Positions 6,501 through 64,000 of a DNA stretch of 64,000 nucleotides are shown piece by piece; position 1 is the stretch's first letter, and each line of letters opens with the position of its first letter. Both the position numbers and the translations under genes were made by a program. The notes under the pieces were generated by a model. It ran no database searches. It had not been told where the DNA came from and worked only from the letters and a program-made list of their open reading frames with translations. The DNA comes from Raja brachyura (lineage: Eukaryota), in NCBI GenBank assembly GCA_963514005.1, contig OY740804.1, positions 5,270,001 through 5,334,000 of the forward strand, read 5' to 3'.

Positions 6501-9500
6501 CCTGTGCTTGTCCCACATCACTCTTAAAGCTTTCTTCTCCATGTATCTCTCCAAATGTCTTTTAAACGCTGGAATTGGACTTGCCTTTACCACTTCCTCT
6601 GTCGGTTTGATCCGTGTGATGAGAGTGGTCAAATCTGGGGTGAATTGACAGGAAGATGGGACGAATATAATGGGATTGTGGAGATGAATGGAAATGGATG
6701 CTTGATGGGCCAGCATGAGCTCAAAGGGCCAAAGGGCCTGCTTCCATACTGACGGTTCTGTGAAAACCATCTGGTTGGAAGCTGCAATAATATGCAGAAG
6801 TGTGTCAATCTTATCCAGATTGAACAAGAATGTTTTCATCTGCAAATGGTGCAGAGGAAGTGATGGCCACAGGAAGCCAGGAGACGATTGAGATCTTTCA
6901 GAAGCAGAAGGAGACAAACATATTTCCCAACAGGTTCAGACGTCGACGTCCTGTTATTTAGCTTAGTGATGACACGTGAACCCACTGAATCTCCATGCAG
7001 TGAAATTATCCGGAAATTGTAAAGCCGTTTTGAATTAGAACCCTTGGAAACACCCAGGAGCGGTGGAGGTAAGATCTGCAGGAGGAAGGCAGGAGAGATG
7101 ACTGATGACAACTTTGCTGAATTCATCAAGTCATAGAATTATACAGCACTGGCCATGCACTGAAGTTTAAATGTGTTCTGCTCCTTCCCTGTTCACAATC
7201 TAATGCTTCACACCAGAAACATGGCTCAGCTCATTTCTCAATGACTAAATGAGTATTTGGTTTAGTTTAAGAAAGAACTGCAGATGCTGGAGAAATCGAA
7301 GGTAGACAAAAATGCTGGAGGAATACAGTGGGTGAGGCAGCATCTATGGAGCGAAGGAATAGGTGACGTTTCGGGTCGAGACCCTTGAATTAGAAGGGTC
7401 CCGACCCGAAACGTCACCTATTCCTTCTCTCCATAGATGCCGCCTTACCCGCTCAGTCCCTCCAGCATTTTTGTCTACCTTTGGTTTAGCTTAGTTTAGT
7501 TTAGAGATAAACCATAAAAACTTCGGCCAAATAGTCCACACCAACCACCAATTATCCGCACTCTAGTCGTAGAGTCATACAGCATGGAAACAGGCAACTT
7601 CGGCGCAACCGACCAACATGCTCCATCTACACTCGTCCCACCTGCCTGCATTTGCCCATATCCCTCCAAACCTGTCCTATCCATGTACCTGCCTTAATGT
7701 TTCTTAAACGTTGTGATAGAATTGAAGACTGTGCAGTGTTTCAATTTCGGAACATATTTGTTTTGCTTAGTTGGTAGATGGAGCATGGAAACAGGCCCGT
7801 CGACCCACCAGGTCCACGCCGAACATTGATCATCCATTCACACTAGTTCTACATTATCCCACTTTCTCATCCATGTCCTGCACCCTGGGGGCAATCAACA
7901 GATTTGCAGCAGTCCAAGAATGTGGTTCACCAGCATCTTTGCATGGTTTTTGTTGCATTGACCACTTCTGAGGTCGCTCCCTGTTATGTCAGTTCCATTT
8001 TCATGGCCAAAGTGTTACAACGCAGGCCAGGCATGGTGACTATTCTCATCGTCGCCATGGCCTCTTGCTCATTGTGTACAAGCAACAGGAGAGATTTTGC
8101 TAATTTTAGTCTCAAATGAAAATGAAGTGTAGGTAAGGTTTGGGCATCTGTAGCCAGACAGGGTGTTTGACGAAAGAAAGCAGCAGAGAACTTAAGCAGA
8201 GAATCAGGAGGGCTAAAAGGGGCCATCAAATGTCCTTCACGAAAACAGACACAAAAATTGTTCCTAGTGTGTAGGATAGTGCCAGTGTACGGGGTGATCG
8301 CTGGTCGGCGTGGACTCGGTGTATCTCTAAGTCTAAAGATGTAAACAAAGCATCTAATCCCCTTCCTTATGGAAGCACCAACTACCCGTACACTAGTTCT
8401 ATTCTACACACCAGGAAACCATTTAATGCACAAACCTACACATCCTTGGTATGTGATGGGAAACCGGAGCACCCACGTGGTCACGGGGAGAATGCACCGA
8501 CTTGTACAGACAGCATCCATAGTGAGGATCGAACCCGGGACTCTGGTGCTGTGAGGCAGCAACTCTACCGCTGGGCCACTGTGCTGCAATTAATAATAAT
8601 AATAATACTAATAATCAATTTATTTGTACAGCAATTTTAAAACAACTCACTTTGACCAAAGTGCTTCACATCAGTGCAGGTACTAATGTGATACATACAA
8701 CCGGTGGACAGACCTGACAAAACATACATAAACTGTTGACAGCGCCCCCTCAGAGGGGCTCAAAAACAGTAGAAATAGGTTTTGAGTCATGACTTAAAGG
8801 AGTCGATGGTGGGGGCAGTTGTGATGAGGAGCGGGATGCTATTCCACAGTCTAGGTGCTGCAACCGCAAAAGCGCGGTCACCCCTGAGCTTAAACCTGGA
8901 CCGCGGGATAGTCAGTAGCCCCAAGTCGGCCGACCTGAGGGTCGGAGGCATTCCCCTGCTACTTTTCCTCAATGCAATAGATTATATTAGATAGACACAT
9001 CTGTAAATAAGCGATCCACACACTCTTGAAGTGTATAGCATCCTTTAATAATGGCACAGGGTATAACACACGTCAGCAAGCACTGGTTACATTCTGTTAC
9101 TGAACTATACCCAGGGAGGGGAAAGCGCTATGATTGATGTTAACTACGGCGGGGTTATTGGTACTGAGGTAGCTATATTATTGTCAAGTCAAAGTCAAAG
9201 TAAACTTTATTGTCAATTCAAATAATGCAACAAGTAGTTACACAGAGGATTGAAATTGCGTTTCCCCATACTCCAAATGTGCAAGTAATATTTATAACAC
9301 AGACAGACAATATACCATTTTGAGGTATGTTATTAAGGTGCAATAATAAAAGGTACAATATAGAAAAGTGCAAATAGCATACTGCAGACATTGAGTTAAA
9401 GTTATTTGACAGTCAGTTGGTCTTTGTTTGTGTAATGTTCATGGAATTTTCTTGAGTGAGTTGTGTAGTCTGATGGCCTGAGGGAAAAAGCTGTTTTTGA

Positions 9501-12500
9501 ATCTGGTGGTTTTGCGGTGGCGTTTGCCGGATGGAAGGGGGGTGAACAGTTTGTGTGCTGGATGGGTGGTGTCTTTGATGATGTTGGTTGCTCTCTCGCG
9601 ACGGCGAGATGGGTATAAGTCCTGGATTGCTGGTTGGGGTGATCTGGTGATCTTCTCCGCTGTCCTCACCACTCTCTGTAGGGCCTTCTGGTCAGCAGCA
9701 GAGCAACTGCCATACCAGACTGAGAGACTACTGGTAAGAATGCTCTCAATGGCACCCCTGTAAAAGGTGGTGAGGGCAGAAGGGGGGAAGGTCGGCTCTC
9801 CTCATCCGTCGAAGGAAGTGGAGGCGTTGCTGTGCTTTCTTGACTAGGGAGATGGTGTTGGTGGACCATGTCTGATCATCTGTGATGTGCACTCCCAGGA
9901 ACTTGGTGCTTTTCACAATCTCCACTGCACTGCCATTGATGGTGAGTGGGGTGTGTGCTGTCTGTTTCTTCCTGAAGTCCACAGTTATTTCTTTTTATTG
10001 ACATTGAGTTTAAGGTTATTGATGTCACACCAGTTGATGAGTTGTTGAACCTCCGCTCTGTAGGCTGAGTCGTCATCGTGGCTGATGAGGCCCACTACTG
10101 TAGTGCCATCTGCGAACTTGATGATGTGATTCGAATTGTGTTTGGCACAACAGTCATGTGTCATCAGCGTGAACAACAGAGGGTTCAGCACACATCCCTG
10201 TGGGACCCCGGTGTTCATGATGGTGGTCTCTGATGAGTTTTTGCCAACTCTTACTGTCTGTGGTCTGTCGGTAAGGAAGTCCAGTAACCAGTTGCATAGT
10301 GGGGTGCTGATGCCTATTTCGCCGAGTTTATTGACCAGGTGTTGGGGGATGACTGTGTTGAAGGCGGAGCTGAAGTCGATAAACAGCATCCGCACGTAAC
10401 TGTTATTGTTTTCCAGATGAGCCAGGCTTAGGTGGAGTGATGTTGCTATGGCATCATCAGTGGAACGGTTGGGACGATATGCAAACTTGACCAATCTTTC
10501 AAAGCACTTCATCATGATGGACGTGAGTGCTATGGGCCGGTAATCGTTCAGTGTTGAGGCTGGAGATTTCTTAGGTAACGGTATGATGGTGGTGTCTTTG
10601 AAGCATGCTGGTATGATGGCTTGGCTCAGAGAGGTGTTGAAGATGTCCGTGAGAACATCTGTGAGTTGGTCAGCACAGTCTCTGAGCACACGCCCCGGTA
10701 TGTTGTCAGGACCTGCAGCTTTTCTGGGGTTCACCTTGAGTAGGGTCCTCCGCACATCAACTGGGTCCAGGTGAAGTGTTTCATGGTCTGGGCAGGGAGG
10801 GGCTTTTGTTGGTGTGGTGGTGTTGTCTTCCTCAAACTGGTTGAAGAAGGTGTTAAGTGTGTTGAGGAAGTCTGCGTTGTCCTCGCACGGTAGGGGTGTT
10901 GGCCTGTAGCCGGTGACATACTGGATGCCTTGCCACAGGCGCTTGGGGTCCTTAGTGTCTGTGAAGTGTGCTTGAATTTTCTGTCCATAGACACGCTTGG
11001 CTGTTCTCCCACCCCGGTTCAAGTTGGCCCTAGCAGTACTAAAGGCGTCTTTGTCCCCGGACTTGAAAGCAGCATTCCGTGCCTTCAGGAGCTCACGTAC
11101 CGCCCTGGTGAACCAGGGTTTGTTGTTGGCCCTCGTGGTGATGTTTTTGATGACGGTCGCATCTTTCATGGATTTGAATATATATCCAGTCACAGATTCA
11201 GTGTATTCCGTCAAGTTGACATGATGGTTGGTAGTGGCAGCCTCCCTAAAAACGGTCCAATCTGTGCAGTCGAAACAGTCTTTGAGAGCTGAGGTGGCTC
11301 CCTCTGGCCATGCTCTGATCTGCATCACAGATATTGGTTGCATGCATAAACCATCTACATCCCTCCACTTAGAAAATCAAAACAGATCAGAAGTCATGAC
11401 AACAGAATTAAAGAAAATCACCATAACGAACAGGTGGCTTTCTAATCCAGCCCGAGCGCGTACGGATGTCTCCCCCTTCCCCCGAACGATTAGAAGAAAC
11501 AGCCGGGGAACCAGAGAAAGGCGGTGGGGTAGGAGAAGCAGGAGAGACAGAACCGCGACCGCCAACAGGAGACCCGCGCAAAGTAGAACAGGGCGCGCGA
11601 GATGGGGATCGAGGCATGCAGGGAACACGAGCTGGGACGGCAGCCGGCTGTTGATAAGAGAGGGGCGGGGCATAGGGGCCCGCAGGCTGCGGCTTCAGCT
11701 CATTCACAGCAAGCAGGCGTTGACGGCTTCTTCGGTAAATAGTTTCTTCAAAGTCGACCAGGTACGAACGAGGTGAATCGGCCGCCCCAACTACGGTGGC
11801 CAGACGGGAGTAACCACTGGTGGTCTGCAGGCGAACAACCTGTCCAGGCAACAGAGGATCGAGTGGTCTGCACGACCGATCGTGGGAACGCCGCTGGCTG
11901 CCATGTTTCTCTTGAATGCGCCTCTGCACGGACGCAGGCTCCAGCACCCGAGGTTGCAGCTGGCGCTGAGCAATCGGAATAATAGGTCTGGTTGTTCTGG
12001 ACATCAGACACTGAGCAGGGGACCCCATGGCCGGATCCCTGGAAATGTTCCTGAGGTTCAGGAGATCCAAATACAAGTCGGAGTTAGACAGTCGTGCCTG
12101 TTCCATAAAAAGCTTGGCGCTGCGGATGGCCCGTTCAGCAAGGCCATTGCTCTGTGGGTACTCTGGACTGCTGGTGAAATGCACGAAATTCCACTTATCA
12201 GCAAAAACTTTGAACTCTCGACTGGTAAACTGCCTTCCATTGTCAGTCTGCAACCGGACAGGAGACCCAAAAGTGGAGAAGTGTTTCCGCAGCTTACGGA
12301 TTACCATCTCCGACGTGAGGGATGTCAGCAAATCCACCTCGAACCAGTTGGAGTACGAGTCGACCAGGACAAGGTAGTGGTTACCACGCCACTCGAAGAT
12401 GTCGGCAGCCAGCGAGGACCAGGCCAAGGCAGGAGCAGGTTGTTGCAGCAGGGGCTGTCGCTGCTGGTGTGGTGCAAGACTGTTGCACGTGGAGCAGGCA

Positions 12501-15500
12501 GAAACGCGGTCCTGGATATACTTGGCCATTCCAGGCCAGTAGAATTGGCATTGAGCGTGGGCGAGTGTTGCATCGACCCCCGGATGTCCGCTATGGGCTG
12601 AGCAGTAGTACGAATCAACTAGGGAAGACGGGACTACAACTTTATGTCCCTTGACGATAACGCCATCCTGGAGCACCAGTTCGTCGTGGACCAGGAAGAA
12701 AGGCTGTGTTTCAGTCGGCACACTGGAGCACTTTGTTGGCCACCCCGATTTAATCACCACGGCAAGCCGCTGCAGAACTGGATCGGCAGTGGTGTGCTCA
12801 GCCAGAAGCTGTAACTGCTTGGTGGGAATAAAGTCAATTCCCAGTACGAGCAAGTCTTCTGTTTCGTAGGGGTGGCGGGCACAGGAAGTCCGCGGGGCGT
12901 GGGACAGGGTGTCCGCAATCAAACGCTGCAGCCTAGCAGGGGCAGCATGAATCGGTTTGTTCAGAATTGTCACCAGTGGCTGGTGGTCGGTTTCGACCGT
13001 GAATTTGCTGCCAAACAGGAAGTCTCTGAACTTAGAGCAGGCAAACTACCATGAGCAGCTCCTTCTCGATCTGAGCATACCGCTGCTCGGTGTCCGTCAT
13101 GGTGCGGGAAGCATAGGAGACAGGATGAAGCGATCCATCGACAGACTGTAGGCAGGCCGCGCCCAGACCGAACTTGGAAGCGTCACAGGTGACGGTGATG
13201 GGGTGACTCACGTCAAAGAACCGCAATGTCAGTGTGTTAATCAGTCTGGACTTCAGACAGTCGAAAGCCTGCTGGTGCTGTGGGAGCCAGGCCCAGGCGA
13301 TATCTTTTTTTGTCAGCTGCCGCAGGGATGCACTCGGCTCACTGAGATTTGGTATGAACTTCCCAAGGTAATTCACCATGCCCAGGAAGCGTTGCAGACC
13401 TGGCACGTCGGTGGGGGCTACCATCTCGGAAATGGCAGCAGCCTTCAAGGGATTAGGTTTCAGTCCGTTAGAGGTGAAAACATGTCTAACATACGTGACT
13501 TCTGAGACTCAAAACCTGCACTTCTTGGGGTTCAGTTTCAGGTTGGCCTGTCGCGCCCGATCCAGGACGCGGCGGAGGTTCAGGTCGTGCTCGGAAATGT
13601 CCTTCCCATAGACCAGGATGTCATCCACGATGATGGCACATGACAGGTCTGAGAATACCTGCTCCATCGTTCGCTGGAACACTTCGCTAGCAGAATTGAT
13701 GCCGAATGGCATTCGCAGAAACTTGAATCTGCCGAACGGTGTGGAGAAAGTCGTCGGGTCAGAGGAAGTTTTGTCCAATGGAATCTGCCAAAACGAGTTC
13801 TTAGCGTTGAGGACCGAGAAGACGGTGGCCTGCCTGACCCGAGCAGCCACGTCCTCAACAGACCGCATGAGGTAGTGGGGTTGCCTGATGGCAAGGTTTA
13901 AGTCCTTCGGGTTGATGCACACGCGTATTTCATTCTTGTCTTTCTTTAGCGTGGCAACCATGGTGGAGACCCACTCAGTGGGCTCGCTAACCGCTTCTAG
14001 CACCCCCTTTTCGACCATGTTGTTAAGCATCGCCTCGACCTTGTCTTTCTTGGCATGAGACACCCTGTGAGGTGCGCGGACCACGGGCGTCACATTTGGG
14101 TCAATGGAAATACGGTAAGTCAGTGGTAACTTTCCCAGGTCATCGTTGAACAGGTCTGGGTATTCTGCTACTGGGTCAAACGACATTAGCACTTTGTGGA
14201 CCGTGCGGTCGAAGGACACCAGGCCGAGGTCCTGGCACGCACGGTTGCCCAGCAGAGTCACACGATTGGAGGTCTCCGATTGGAGACGTGGGTTCGTATC
14301 CCACTTCTGACACCATGTAAATAAGCGATCCACACATTCTTGAAGTGTATAGCATCCTTTAATAATGGCACAGGTATAACACACATCAGCAAGCACTGGT
14401 TACATTCTGTTACTGAACTATACCCAGGGAGGGGAAAGCGTTATGATTGATGTTAACTAATGCGGGGCTATTGGTACTGAGGTAGCTATATTATTGGTTG
14501 CATGCATAAACCATCTACAACATCCTTCTCTCCAGTGATGTTGCTTGGCCCGCTGTGTTACTCTAGCATTTTGTGTCCACCTCCGGTGTAAACCAGCATC
14601 AGCAGTTTGTTCCTACACAGATTATATTAGAGTTAGGGAAGTAACTTCATGAAAACATATTTGTCCTGCATCCGATCCTCTTCCGCAAAGAGTGAACTGT
14701 GCCTTACAGCGCCAGAGACCAGGGTTCGATCCTGACTATGGGTCCGGTCTTTATGGAGTTTGCATGTTCTCCCCATGACTGCATGGTTTTTCTCCGAGAG
14801 TTTTGGTTTCCTCCCACACTCCATAGACGTACAGGTTTGTAGATTAATCAGCTTGATATAAATGTAAATTATATACAGACCACCAAACAGCAGTAGGGAG
14901 GTTGGGGATAGCTTCATGCAGGAAATTAGGGATGCATGGGTGACTTTACATTGGGCCAACCCAAATTGGTAACAACACTGAGAAGGAGGATTTCCTGGAA
15001 TGTATAGGGGATGGGTTTTTAAACCAATATGTAGAGGAACCGACTCGAGGGCAGGCCATCCTTAACTGGGTATTGTGTAACGAGGAAGGTTTAGCAATCT
15101 TGTTACGCAAGGCCCCTTGGGCAACAGTGACCATAATATAGTGGAATCCTGCATTAGGATGGAGGGTGACACAGTTAATTCAGAGACTAGGGTCCTAAAC
15201 TTGATTAAAGGAGACTTTGAAGGTATGAGATGGGAATTGGCTGGGATAAACTGGCAAACTATACTTGACAGTGGAGATGCAATGGCAAAGATTTAAAGAC
15301 CGCAAGGATGAACTCCAGAAATTGTTCATCCCTGTTTGGCGAATAAATAAAACTGGGAAGGCGGCTCAACCATGGCTGACGAGGGAAGTCAAGGATAGTG
15401 TTAAATCCTAGGAAGAGGCATATAAATTGGCCAGAAGAAGTGGCAAACCAGAGGACAGGGAGAAATTTAGAACTCAACAGAGGAGAACAAAGGGGTTAAT

Positions 15501-47397: not shown

Positions 47398-47835
47398 CAG
47401 AGTCAGAGAGTTGTGGTTCAAATCCCACTCCTGAAGCCCGAGGACTGAGGGAGTGCGGTACTGAGGGAGTTCGCCACTTCCGAGGCATTTAGCTGATCTG
47501 CTGTCTGCTCGATCTCAAGTCACTGAGAAAGGTCACCTGGAGATAGTTCATGCCAGAATAGTGGAGAGACTCCTTGTTCTGGGGGCAAGAGGTATCCCTA
47601 CAAACCAAGATCAACAAGGCAAGCTGTAGGTAGTTATCACCCTTCTCTACAGGGAGCTAGCTGTGTGCAATTTGGCTGCACACAACACAACAACAATTGG
47701 TGATGGACGTCTCCACTGAAACTATCGAGTGTTGATCAACTTATCATTAGCACCTCACCCTGTGCAGTGAGGCCCGTGGCTAAAAATAATTCAAGGCACT
47801 AAGTAAATAATTCTAAAGAATAGAGCATTTTATAA
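47398..47835 (+). mobile_element. Diverged Deu-domain SINE-like unit (SacSINE1/AmnSINE-like)
   Basis: B-box-like GGTTCAAATCCCAC, ACTGAGGGAG repeats, core GGGAGCTAGCTGTGTGCAATTTGGCTGC; inverted homologs at about 571-790 and 1180-1491. Confidence 0.55.
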
Positions 47836-54245: not shown

Positions 54246-55661
54246 CTAAGGATGATAAAGAAATAGATTGCAAAAATATGACTAAAAATTAATACTGTAA
54301 ATCCGTTGCAATACATATTTTAAGGAATAGTTGTCTGCAGTGTGTTTTGACATTTGCAATAGAAAAATCGACTGAAAGGTAATCCCTTTAGCCACAAGGG
54401 CCACATCTAACTCCCTCTTAAATATAGCCAATGAACTGGCCTCAACTACCTTCTGTGGCAGAAAATTCCACAGATTCACCACTCCATGTGTGAAAAATGT
54501 TTTTCTCATCTCGGTCCTAAAAGACTTCCCCCTTATCCTTAAACTGTGACCCCTTGTTCTGAACTTCCCCAACATCGGGAACAATCTTCCTGCATCTAGC
54601 CTGTCCAACCCCTTAAGAATTTTGTACGTTTCTATGAGATCTATCTGTTTCCATGCTGTATCTCTAAACTAAACTAAATTAAACTAAACTAAACTCCAAA
54701 CATGTGCAGGTTTGTAGCGTAATTGACTTCTGTCAATTGTCCCTTGTGTGTAGGGTGGAACTAGTATACGCTGGTTGGACTCAGTGGGCTAAAGGGCCTG
54801 TGTCTACACTGTATCTGTAAACTAAACTGCAGCAAACTATTATATCTCAGAAGATGCCCTTTTAAAACACTTCCAAGCACACAGAATAATGTGTCACTGT
54901 AGGATTGCTATTTTTTAAATGTCAGCCTGACTTTAATTCACCTGAAAACACCAAAATGGCACCTCCTGCTCTTGGTACTGATTTAATAATTTAGTAAATA
55001 AATAATTGAACCACACTGTGGTGATGGAGGATGGACGAATGAATGTCATGCACACAGGACCTCTTTTATCACTCCTATGATTGGAACGTTATGTTACTGT
55101 CCTTGTGCATACTTGTGTCTTGTATGTACAGCATTGTATATTGTTCTCTGTCTCTTGTCTGTAGTGTCAGGGCATATTCTTATTCATTGTTCATCTCGAG
55201 TGCAGCCTCTCCATAGATTCCTGCAGGTGTCAGCTGGCATTCAGCTGGTGACACTGTGAGCCAGAGGTTGGGGGTTCAAATCCCACTGCCATGTGAGTTG
55301 AGCACAAAGATCGCGTCTAACCATTCAGCGTGGAACTCAAGCAGTGAATTATTGTTGGAGATGCTGTCAGATGAGACAAGTAACTTAGGCTTTCCCTGCT
55401 CTCTCTGAAGGGTCTGTTAAGCTGCTGCAAGTAAGAATTTCATTGTTCTGTTTTCAGTAAATATGATAATTAAATACTCTTAATTCTTGGCTTGAGGATA
55501 TATGAGGTCCTTTGCCAAGGTGAATTGATTATTATTTTCCCCCACATGATCCATGTCCTCATTTTAATGAAAACACAAATAATCTGAGTATTAACACATC
55601 AATTTGCATGTTTTCCCCGTGACCGTGTGGGTTTTCTCTGCGTGCTCCTGTTTCCTCCCTA

Positions 55662-62211: not shown

Positions 62212-64000
62212 TGTGATGTATGTGATATAATTAGCATACGTTATGTCTTGTGCGAGGGGACGCATGCGCTGGGGGAGACTCAAGGAGGCGTCCAGGAATA
62301 AAGAAGCTTGGTAGTTTACTGCTGTATCTGAGTGTTCTGTTAAGTCAGTTCCAAGCACCCAAATACACTACAATTGGCGACGAGGATGGGATGGGGTTTG
62401 TAAACTCACCCACAGGACTGTTTTGCGTCACGCAGGATTGTTTAACAGTTTAAACTGTAGATACGGAGTTGTGTCACAGTTGTTTGCGAGCTGGACAAGA
62501 GAGCTGGACAAGAGAGGCCTACAGATCCCTCTAAGCATGGGACTGTAGTTTAAAACATCAGCTGTACAAGTCGGCGAGTTTGTCAGGCTATCTCTATGTT
62601 GTGTCTACGTGGCAAGATGTTGTCCTTCGGATTGTTACACATTTTAGACTGAGTTTTTTTTGTCGAATTCCTCAAACTGAATAATCTTTGTACAGCTAAG
62701 TTTTAGGTGAATTGTTACACCAAAACACACAACAAGGATAACGAGGCAACGAGGATAAAAGAACAGAAAAGAACAAAGAAGAAGGGCTGTCAAGAGACCA
62801 AAAAAAGTTAAAAAGAAGAGATTGTGTTTGGAAACAAAGTGGAACGGCACTAAGCAAAAAGATTTGGCGCCAAATGGTTTTGAATTGGTGCCAAAGAAAA
62901 GAGAGGTCGGAACAGGAAGCAAGGAAAACAAGTGGAGTAGTAAGTGTCACCGAAGAACGCAGCCGAAAGCTGGAAGCCTAACCAGCAGGACAGCGACGGT
63001 GTCAACTTACCTGGAACGCTTTCCAGGGCCGTGTAGCCACGGCAATGGAGCAGAAGAGGCACAGCAGCCGCCACCGACTTCGGGTGAGCTCCAGGGCCGT
63101 GTACCGTGTTGGCCACGCAAGAGAAGCGGACCAGCCGAGTGAGAGAGCCGACCGCGAGAGAGAAGCGGACCAGGCCCCGCGAGGGAAGCGGGACACAGCA
63201 CACAGTCGCAAGAGACGGCCAAGAGTGGGGAAAGCCCGAACGTGAGAGGAAATTCGGCCCCGAGCGAACAGTGGGTCCATGCGAGAGAAGCAGGACACAG
63301 CACTCAAGCACTTCAGCCCGGTCGGGAGCAGAGTAAAGGGCCTGTCCTACAAGCATGCAACTCTATGCGATGAACGCGATCAAACTAGAAGCGGGGGCCA
63401 CGCGGAGGTCTGGTGATTCCCTGTACAGGGCCATTCCCACCACCATGCGCCTGCATGCGGCCAGCGCGACCAAACCGGCAGCAGGGGCCGCGTGGAGGTC
63501 GAGTGAGTGGCGCAACGCGGCGCAAAGTGAGGCGAACTTGGAGCGACGTCTAAAGTAAGTTCGCCAGGACAGAGAGGGGCACACAGAGAGGGACACAGAT
63601 GCACACACACACACAGGGCCATGGAGCCACACACATAGAGGGTCACGGAGGCACCTACAGATAGGTTCACGGAGGCACGATGTCGGGGCGGTGTGTAATG
63701 CGTGGAGGCGACTGCGATCCGACAAGCCGTTGCCGCACGGAATTTTTGAACATAGTCAGTTTTTCGGAGCCCCGCGCGATGTCGGGACGAACTCCGCACA
63801 ATTCCGCACGGCCCCGGCGATCGAAGTGGGACCGGCCCCGCGACGCCGGACGGCTCAAGCGACCACGTTAGGTCGCGCTAATCGCATAGAGGTGCATGCT
63901 GGTGGGACAGGCCCTTAAGCCCGGTCGTGGGAGAAAGCAGAGAAAGCCTGGTCGCGAGAGAAAGCCGGCCGAGAGAGAGAGAGAAGCAGGTCTGCGTGAG
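62212..64000 (+). mobile_element. Gypsy-type LTR element 5' portion (LTR 62212-62372, PBS 62375-62392, non-coding-looking internal region), runs off the window
   Basis: TGT...ACA LTR containing AATAAA, followed by TGGCGACGAGGATGGGAT (18 nt complementary to the tRNA-Ser(GCT) 3' end, from recall). Confidence 0.75.
63337..63915. mobile_element. PIF/Harbinger-type MITE
   Basis: TIR AGGGCCTGTCC(T/C)AC with ~50-bp imperfect arms; TAA TSD (63334-36, 63916-18). Confidence 0.85.

What the first reader, a model, noticed from the sequence alone, without database searches (positions are those of the whole stretch)
14263..14315. Fossil of RT reading through m1A58 of its primer tRNA: 45-nt PBS with a mismatch at position 58, fused directly to pol
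Seen: beside the Gypsy 5' LTR the tRNA-like sequence extends past the usual 18-nt PBS (14298-14315, tRNA positions 59-76). It continues through a paired T arm (GTGGG/CCCAC) and a variable-arm hairpin (GTCTCC-GATT-GGAGAC) to 14271. The T-loop reads TTCGTAT rather than TTCGAAT, so the change (14297) is exactly at position 58. The sequence then jumps into the protease C-terminus (NRVTLLGNRACQDLGL), so leader, gag and most of the protease are missing. A 9-nt repeat CGATTGGAG lies on both sides of the junction (14263-71, 14277-85), while the LTR termini and the ACATC TSD are preserved. Known: plus-strand strong-stop DNA normally ends at m1A58, and RT read-through of m1A causes misincorporation. Inference: an over-extended strong-stop DNA mis-transferred by microhomology into pol and was integrated, recording a tRNA modification in germline DNA. 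The second LTR element here has an exact 18-nt PBS (62375-62392) as an internal contrast.
Basis: partly seen in the sequence, partly recalled or inferred. Interest (0 to 1): 0.85.

Follow-up and report, generated by a model that had tools for sequence, protein, structure and literature searches.

The report
Primer tRNA copied into a retrotransposon
A dead Gypsy-type retrotransposon carries, next to its 5' LTR, a 44-45-base DNA copy of its tRNA-Leu primer instead of the usual 18 bases, joined straight to the middle of pol; this is a genomic fossil of a known reverse-transcription error, and its claimed record of a tRNA methylation is plausible but unproven.

Summary
The sequence description holds. 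A minus-strand Ty3/Gypsy element has two LTRs, a 5-bp ACATC target duplication and an exact 18-nt tRNA-Leu(CAA) primer site. The tRNA match then runs 26-27 nt further, through the T arm and the variable-arm hairpin, with T instead of A at tRNA position 58. After that the sequence enters the protease C-terminus. Leader, gag and most of the protease are missing.

Two points fail.
- Position 58 is probably not the only mismatch. A at 14286 replaces a G found in almost all (about 125 of 130) natural tRNA-Leu matches retrieved.
- The 9-nt repeat is not a pol microhomology. Other family copies read differently beyond 14263, so 14264-14271 is an 8-nt filler copied from the variable arm.

New here: metagenome contigs hold ten LTR ends joined to CCA-ended tRNA-Leu(CAA) copies of about 30-59 nt; the one long enough to test is intron-less. 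Lengths differ within one LTR family. This supports recurrent over-extension of plus-strand strong-stop DNA into the primer.

Still open: whether the over-extension and the deletion were one event, and whether T58 is an m1A58 scar. The host tRNA gene and full-length family members could not be fetched. The scan noted a similar LTR plus 59-nt tRNA-Leu case elsewhere in this genome (s1-880697). This is a new variant of a known aberrant product, of moderate interest.

The parts
14316..14519 (-). 5' LTR (204 bp, TG..CA)
   Evidence: Aligns to 9002-9183 at 96.2% identity and to 11332-11359 at 100%. Read directly.
14298..14315 (-). Canonical 18-nt primer binding site, complementary to tRNA-Leu(CAA) positions 59-76 including CCA
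   Evidence: Exact match to the acceptor/T-stem end shared by about 130 natural tRNA-Leu gene matches. It is the only such site in the window.
14272..14297 (-). Extension: copy of tRNA positions 58 back to about 43 (rest of the T loop, the T stem 5' strand, and the whole variable-arm hairpin). T at 14297 is position 58. A at 14286 is a second departure.
   Evidence: Natural variable arms such as GTCTCC-GAAT-GGAGGC differ from it at 2 positions.
14264..14271 (-). 8-nt filler GATTGGAG (+ strand), a direct copy of 14278-14285. G at 14271 could instead be tRNA G42.
   Evidence: The 9-mer is unique to these two sites. Other copies of the family diverge from the window exactly after 14263 (loose ends).
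13512..14263 (-). pol, starting inside the protease C-terminus (..VTLLGNRACQDLGL) and running into RT
   Evidence: Pfam RVT_1. 67% identity to P0001, whose sequence continues upstream as FYVLNFNS. The loose-end consensus of other copies translates to ..YVLNSDC before VTLLGN.
13035..13448 (-). RNase H piece of pol (separate ORF, so the frame is broken)
   Evidence: Pfam RT_RNaseH_2 and RT_RNaseH.
11411..12973 (-). Integrase piece of pol
   Evidence: Pfam Integrase_H2C2 and rve.
11360..11372 (-). Polypurine tract next to the 3' LTR (element sense ..AAGTGGAGGGA)
   Evidence: Read. Assigned by position and purine content only.
11337..11359 (-). Inner 23 bp of the 3' LTR
   Evidence: Exact match to 14497-14519.
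9002..9183 (-). Outer 182 bp of the 3' LTR
   Evidence: 96.2% identity to the 5' LTR.
9184..11336 (-). Later insertion of a LINE-type RT fragment into the 3' LTR. Not part of the element.
   Evidence: 452-aa ORF with Pfam RVT_1. It interrupts the LTR alignment.
8997..9001 (.). Target-site duplication ACATC (left)
14520..14524 (.). Target-site duplication ACATC (right)

Best explanation
During one round of reverse transcription of a Ty3/Gypsy element primed by tRNA-Leu(CAA), plus-strand strong-stop DNA did not stop after the 18th tRNA nucleotide. It ran on through position 58, the T arm and the variable arm, to about position 43. That 3' tail had no partner at the normal acceptor, the primer-site copy on minus-strand DNA. 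It was joined instead, by a non-homologous template switch that left an 8-nt templated filler, to minus-strand DNA inside the protease C-terminus. Both LTRs were completed, and integrase inserted the shortened DNA, which lacks leader, gag and most of the protease, with a 5-bp target duplication.

Shown: the anatomy, the tRNA origin of the extension, the pol breakpoint, the filler, and integrase-type ends.

Inferred: that over-extension and deletion happened in the same cycle; that the join was made by RT rather than by host repair; and that T at position 58 is a misincorporation opposite m1A58 (my estimate for this last point alone is about 0.45).
For: - The tRNA match is continuous and in register for 44-45 nt from CCA. 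It abuts the LTR and keeps the T-arm and variable-arm hairpins.
- TSD and TG..CA ends on both LTRs show one integrase event.
- Other copies of the family continue in frame into the protease beyond 14263 (P0001). The join therefore sits exactly where the tRNA-derived stretch (tRNA copy plus its 8-nt filler) ends.
- Ten independent LTR|CCA-tRNA-Leu(CAA) tails of about 30-59 nt occur in metagenome contigs. Within one LTR family the lengths are 41, 46, 50 and 59 nt, with different DNA downstream. One tail is intron-less, whereas genes from the same sample series carry an intron. Over-extension is therefore recurrent and arises anew.
- A full-length Gypsy relative (L122) has an exact 18-nt Leu(CAA) primer site followed at once by gag-pol.
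- Literature: m1A58 sets the normal stop. Minor products extend to positions 55, 54 and 37. Loss of m1A58 lets synthesis run on, and such products are regarded as dead ends (PMC13191261; PMC8599865). m1A followed by A gives T or G misreads (PMC4787781).
Against: - The host tRNA-Leu(CAA) gene was not available, so the mismatch count (2, perhaps 3) rests on genes of other organisms.
- At least one other departure (14286) shows that position 58 is not unique. With 2-3 random changes in 45 nt, the chance that one falls on position 58 is about 4-7%. That is suggestive, not decisive.
- All ten comparator tails have A at 58. Nine were selected by a pattern that required it, so this is nearly uninformative, but it gives no support.
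- I could not show that full-length members of this same family lack the extension.
- The filler could equally come from host end-joining after integration.
Confidence: 0.55

Rival explanations
1. The extension is inherited. An ancestor of this copy acquired the long tRNA-complementary stretch in an earlier cycle (or the family keeps it as an enlarged primer site). The loss of leader, gag and protease is then a separate event: either a deletion during a later reverse transcription, or repair of a chromosomal break after integration, with the 8-nt filler left by polymerase-theta-type end joining.
For: - Sequence downstream of the 18-nt site is copied from genomic RNA each cycle, so an extension would be heritable once made (established retroviral replication scheme; PMC13191261).
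- Lentiviruses and spumaviruses keep a short 'primer over-extension sequence' next to the primer site.
- Templated fillers are typical of end joining as well as of RT switching.
- The ~1.7% per-copy substitution level implied by the LTR-LTR divergence leaves room for later changes.
Against: - The deletion would have to end exactly at the last tRNA-derived base by coincidence.
- In the comparator LTR families, extension lengths differ from copy to copy, which indicates de novo events.
- The depth of public contigs dips over 14264-14292 relative to both flanks, with no sign of a high-copy variable-arm segment. This is a weak argument, because contig depth is not copy number and SINE B-boxes inflate the neighbouring bin.
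Confidence: 0.28
2. T at position 58 is an ordinary substitution acquired after integration (or a generic RT error), not a trace of m1A. Read-through happened on a primer lacking m1A58 and was copied faithfully.
For: - Loss of m1A58 is what permits extension in HIV (PMC8599865).
- The comparator tails read A at 58, and in one case read faithfully through G37 as well.
- The element is old (7 LTR differences, broken pol) and has another change in the extension at 14286.
Against: - The expected number of later substitutions at one given site is about 0.017.
- A-to-T is a transversion outside a CpG, and it matches the known m1A-A misread spectrum.
- The 18-nt primer site itself has no change.
Confidence: 0.5
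3. The stretch is not primer-derived. It is either a chance resemblance or a fragment of a tRNA gene or tRNA-derived SINE that happens to lie there.
For: tRNA-like T arms from SINE-type repeats exist elsewhere in the window (47415-47435 and 55270-55286).
Against: - Those repeats share only the B-box core and differ in the acceptor and variable arm.
- Here the match includes CCA, is in register with the LTR end, and lies inside a TSD-flanked element.
- 27 of 28 positions match the T arm plus acceptor, and a Leu-type variable hairpin follows.
Confidence: 0.03

Closest known systems
Over-extended plus-strand strong-stop DNA of HIV-1 (minor products ending at psi55, m5U54 or ms2t6A37) and the lentiviral/spumaviral primer over-extension sequence (Muthuswami et al. 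2002, as reviewed in PMC13191261)
   Same: Plus-strand synthesis copies the primer tRNA beyond position 58. The products carry tRNA-complementary bases 3' of the 18-nt site.
   Different: The HIV products were defined in vitro or in cells, and the tolerated overrun is about 3-4 nt. Here 26-27 nt are fixed in a germline copy of a Gypsy element and joined to pol, not to the leader.
TRMT6-mutant cells, where loss of m1A58 lets HIV-1 plus-strand DNA run past positions 58 and 54 (PMC8599865)
   Same: The same step fails in the same way.
   Different: That study concludes that such DNA is not complementary to the acceptor and cannot be integrated. The window shows a product that did get completed and integrated, at the price of about 1.2 kb or more of coding sequence.
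Circular MLV DNA with a reverse-transcribed tRNA between the LTRs (Colicelli and Goff 1986) and the HIV provirus with an adjoining tRNA-Gly copy (as described in PMC12220202)
   Same: A CCA-ended tRNA copy abuts an LTR end, explained by copying of a retained primer.
   Different: Those involve a spurious tRNA-Gly, nearly the whole tRNA, and unintegrated circles or cultured cells. Here the tRNA is the cognate primer, the copy is partial, and it lies inside a two-LTR germline element.
Single LTR plus tRNA-Leu(CAA) tails found here (L015/L115, L018, L038/L113, L049, L068, L070, L097), and the earlier scan note s1-880697 in this genome
   Same: The same primer species and the same LTR-CCA-tRNA arrangement. 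Tail end points are similar (L068 about 46 nt, window 44-45 nt).
   Different: All of those have one LTR and no pol nearby, so they look like inserted strong-stop DNA. The window's copy has both LTRs, a TSD and pol.
Strong-stop-DNA model for the origin of tRNA-derived SINEs (Ohshima, Okada and colleagues, 1993; recalled from memory, not checked here)
   Same: A tRNA with CCA linked to LTR-derived sequence, as a by-product of retroelement replication.
   Different: That model concerns minus-strand strong-stop DNA with a whole tRNA that goes on to become a mobile SINE. Nothing here suggests mobility of the tRNA-LTR unit.

Membership tests
Ty3/Gypsy LTR retrotransposon | Two LTRs with TG..CA termini flanked by a 4-6-bp target duplication | tested here: met
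   204-bp LTRs and a 5-bp ACATC duplication.
Ty3/Gypsy LTR retrotransposon | pol domain order RT - RNase H - integrase | tested here: met
   Pfam hits in that order on the minus strand.
Ty3/Gypsy LTR retrotransposon | tRNA-complementary primer site next to the 5' LTR and a polypurine tract next to the 3' LTR | tested here: met
Ty3/Gypsy LTR retrotransposon | gag and a complete protease (autonomous member) | tested here: not met
   pol homology begins about 10 residues before the protease end. A full-length relative has about 394 residues upstream of this point. This is a deleted, non-autonomous copy.
Product of plus-strand strong-stop over-extension into the primer tRNA | tRNA complementarity continues in register beyond nucleotide 18, starting from CCA at the LTR edge | tested here: met
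   44-45 nt.
Product of plus-strand strong-stop over-extension into the primer tRNA | Copied from mature tRNA (CCA present, intron absent) | tested here: inconclusive
   CCA is present. The copy stops before the intron site at 37/38, so splicing cannot be judged here. In comparator L115 the copy is intron-less, whereas genes from the same sample series have introns.
Product of plus-strand strong-stop over-extension into the primer tRNA | Extension absent from normal full-length members of the same family | not testable with these tools
Protein hits reach at most 67% identity. Read laying returned only short contigs.
Product of plus-strand strong-stop over-extension into the primer tRNA | Mismatches confined to RT-blocking modified positions | tested here: inconclusive
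   T at position 58 fits. A at 14286 is at a position not known to me as modified. The host gene is unknown.
Primer over-extension sequence (genome-encoded, conserved, a few nt) | Short conserved complement to tRNA positions about 55-58, present in all family members | tested here: inconclusive
   The stretch is 26-27 nt, far longer than the described element. Conservation within the family could not be tested.

The most novel reading that the evidence does not exclude
LTR-plus-primer-tRNA tails are a widespread, so far uncatalogued class of genomic fossils that record the modification state of ancient primer tRNAs. T at position 58 here would be a germline imprint of m1A58. Across many such tails, the end points (for example the L097 tail that stops at position 38, just before m1G37) and the mismatches would map RT-blocking modifications in extinct cell states. 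The window's copy would further show that an over-extended strong-stop DNA, held to be a dead end, can be rescued into an integration-competent element.
Probability: 0.35. Interest if true: 0.7.

Novelty: new variant of a known kind. Interest (0 to 1): 0.5.

Why it matters
Over-extension of plus-strand strong-stop DNA is known from HIV and MLV experiments, where it is treated as a replication dead end. This copy shows a natural outcome of that error: the over-extended end was joined elsewhere, giving a shortened element that still integrated in the germline.

Ten further tails turned up in an unrelated metagenome scan. This suggests such fossils are common enough to survey. A survey could give an independent, DNA-level readout of where reverse transcriptases stop or misread on modified tRNAs. 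It could also identify one route by which deleted, non-autonomous LTR elements and tRNA-LTR chimeras arise.

Tried and rejected
- ARAGORN finds no tRNA in the window. Rfam finds no tRNA hit on the truncated copy, only chance sub-threshold matches.
- A clean tandem duplication is rejected. Only 9 of 14 positions repeat, so the filler is a separate templated piece. I tried several pairing schemes for how the filler arose (hairpin snap-back, re-priming on the same tRNA, priming of the truncated minus strand on the variable-arm stem). None explains the full sequence without an extra homology-free jump.
- Close family members could not be fetched. The viral-contig search by protein found nothing. 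All sequencing runs were short Logan contigs, none spanning 14263-14316 among those listed.
- Depth over the primer-site bin is inflated by SINE-type B-box repeats, so it cannot be used to count copies carrying the extension.
- Literature searches found no description of germline LTR-retrotransposon copies with primer-tRNA over-extension. Several older key papers (Lauermann and Boeke 1997, Colicelli and Goff 1986, Konstantinova 2006) are not held.

Full report
**Anatomy.** The finding lies in a Ty3/Gypsy element on the minus strand.
- The 5' LTR is 14316-14519. The 3' LTR is 9002-9183 plus 11337-11359. It is interrupted by a fragment of about 2.15 kb that encodes a LINE-type reverse transcriptase.
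- Both LTRs have TG..CA ends. ACATC flanks the element at 8997-9001 and 14520-14524, so it entered as one integrase-made insertion.
- The LTRs differ at 7 of 204 positions.
- The internal part carries RT (13512-14261), RNase H (13035-13448) and integrase (11411-12973), in that order and in three broken reading frames. A purine run sits next to the 3' LTR.

**The tRNA-like stretch.**
- On the + strand, which is the tRNA sense, 14298-14315 is the exact 3' end of tRNA-Leu(CAA) including CCA, directly abutting the LTR.
- The match continues leftward through the rest of the T loop, the T stem and a perfect 6-bp variable-arm hairpin, to 14272. It may reach 14271.
- To judge the match without the host's genes, I scanned metagenome contigs for the 25-nt T arm plus acceptor of tRNA-Leu. 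This returned 120 loci with 130 matches, most of them true tRNA-Leu genes of many eukaryotes.
- Their variable arms include GTCTCC-GAAT-GGAGGC, GTCTCC-AATT-GGAGGC and GTCTCC-GTAT-GGAGGC. The window's GTCTCC-GATT-GGAGAC is therefore a Leu-type arm.
- Against this set the window differs at 14297 (T for A58) and at 14286 (A where almost all of the 130 matches have G). Its GATT loop was not seen, although loops vary between species.
The extension is nonetheless real and tRNA-derived.

**The pol side.**
- BLASTP places the start of pol homology at ..VTLLGNRACQDLGL.
- Public contigs laid on 13800-14650 show that the family is high-copy in at least four organisms. Other copies leave the window exactly after 14263 and continue AGTCAGA(A/G)TTCAAAACATA...
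- In the element's frame this reads ..YVLNSDC before VTLLGN. That agrees with the homologue P0001 (FYVLNFNSVTLLGN) and with the end of the protease fold in P0009.
- A full-length relative, L122, has about 394 residues of gag and protease upstream of this point. At least 1.2 kb plus the leader is therefore missing.
- Bases 14264-14271 (GATTGGAG) belong neither to pol nor to the tRNA register. They repeat 14278-14285. The 9-mer that includes the shared C occurs nowhere else in 64 kb.
- The repeat is therefore a templated filler, not a microhomology that guided the jump.

**Comparators.** Nine of the metagenome matches were not genes. They were followed by CCA and then TGT.., an LTR end. L097 carries a second such tail, found by adjacency, which makes ten tails.
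- Aligned from the CCA, their tRNA-Leu(CAA) copies run for about 30 to 59 nt.
- One LTR family (L015/L115, L068, L097) has tails of about 59, 46, 50 and 41 nt, with unrelated DNA beyond them. A second family (L018, L049) has about 40 and 35 nt.
- L115 reads ..GACTCAAGTTCTGG.. across the anticodon loop without the intron carried by tRNA-Leu(CAA) genes of the same sample series. The template was therefore mature tRNA.
- One L097 tail ends at position 38, just 3' of the m1G37 site.
- All of these have a single LTR and no pol nearby.
- L122, found in viral contigs, is a full-length Gypsy with an exact 18-nt Leu(CAA) primer site followed directly by a 1336-aa gag-pol.
I could not see its sequence.

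**Mechanism.**
- In the standard scheme, plus-strand strong-stop DNA copies U3-R-U5 and then 18 nt of the primer, and stops at m1A58. Minor HIV products reach psi55, m5U54 or ms2t6A37. Loss of m1A58 lets synthesis run on, and such DNA is considered unable to complete transfer (PMC13191261; PMC8599865).
- The window's arrangement is what an over-extended strong-stop DNA would give if its unpaired tail were joined to minus-strand DNA inside pol and both strands were then completed. The result is two full LTRs, integrase ends, and an internal deletion starting exactly where the tRNA-derived stretch (tRNA copy plus filler) ends.
- The filler implies at least one extra template switch. I could not derive a unique path for it.
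- The varying tail lengths within single LTR families argue that such tails arise anew rather than being inherited. This favours a single-cycle origin here (confidence about 0.55).
- The main rival (about 0.28) is an inherited extension with a separate deletion.

**Position 58.**
- The LTR divergence implies about 1.7% change per copy since insertion. A later hit at one given site is therefore unlikely (about 0.017).
- The change is an A-to-T transversion outside a CpG. m1A followed by A is misread mainly as T or G by RT (PMC4787781). The 18-nt primer site is unchanged.
- On the other hand, the extension has at least one more change and the host gene is unknown. Read-through may favour unmodified primers. 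The comparator tails, nine of them selected for A58, give no example of a scar.
- I rate the m1A-scar reading at about even odds.

**Limits.**
- The single read-laying run returned only short contigs, and none listed spans the junction.
- No close family member and no host tRNA gene could be read.

Noticed in passing
window 9184-11336: A fragment of about 2.15 kb encoding a LINE-type reverse transcriptase (452-aa ORF on the minus strand, Pfam RVT_1) is inserted inside the Gypsy 3' LTR. Five bases of the LTR are repeated at the two edges of the insertion.
   Followed up: partly
L097:430-560 (minus strand): Two tRNA-Leu(CAA) tails lie in tandem next to one LTR. The first is about 41 nt and ends in CCA plus TGTA. 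It is followed by a second tail that starts at position 38 (just 3' of the m1G37 site) and ends in CCA plus the LTR. This looks like two successive read-throughs with a jump between two primer-DNA junctions.
   Followed up: partly
L068:1690-1960 and L115:6380-6700: Single LTRs of about 200 bp carry 46- and 59-nt tRNA-Leu tails. They are flanked by short imperfect direct repeats (ACACAGAG / ACACTGAG in L068; GTCTGTTG on both sides in L115, the downstream copy lying about 10 nt beyond the tRNA end). They may be inserted strong-stop DNAs. The mode of insertion is unknown.
   Followed up: partly
window 47415-47435 and 55270-55286: tRNA-like T-arm / B-box sequences (GGTTCAAATCCCAC) in other repeats, probably heads of tRNA-derived SINEs. 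They inflate read depth over the primer-site bin of the element.
   Followed up: partly
window 62375-62392: The second LTR element has an 18-nt primer site, TGGCGACGAGGATGGGAT, after which similarity to the tRNA stops. From memory it is complementary to tRNA-Ser(GCT). I did not check it against a gene.
   Followed up: partly
window 14525-14640: The DNA just outside the 5' LTR is an extremely high-copy repeat in all four runs laid, with depth 10-50 times that of the Gypsy family. The element therefore inserted into a SINE-like repeat.
   Followed up: no
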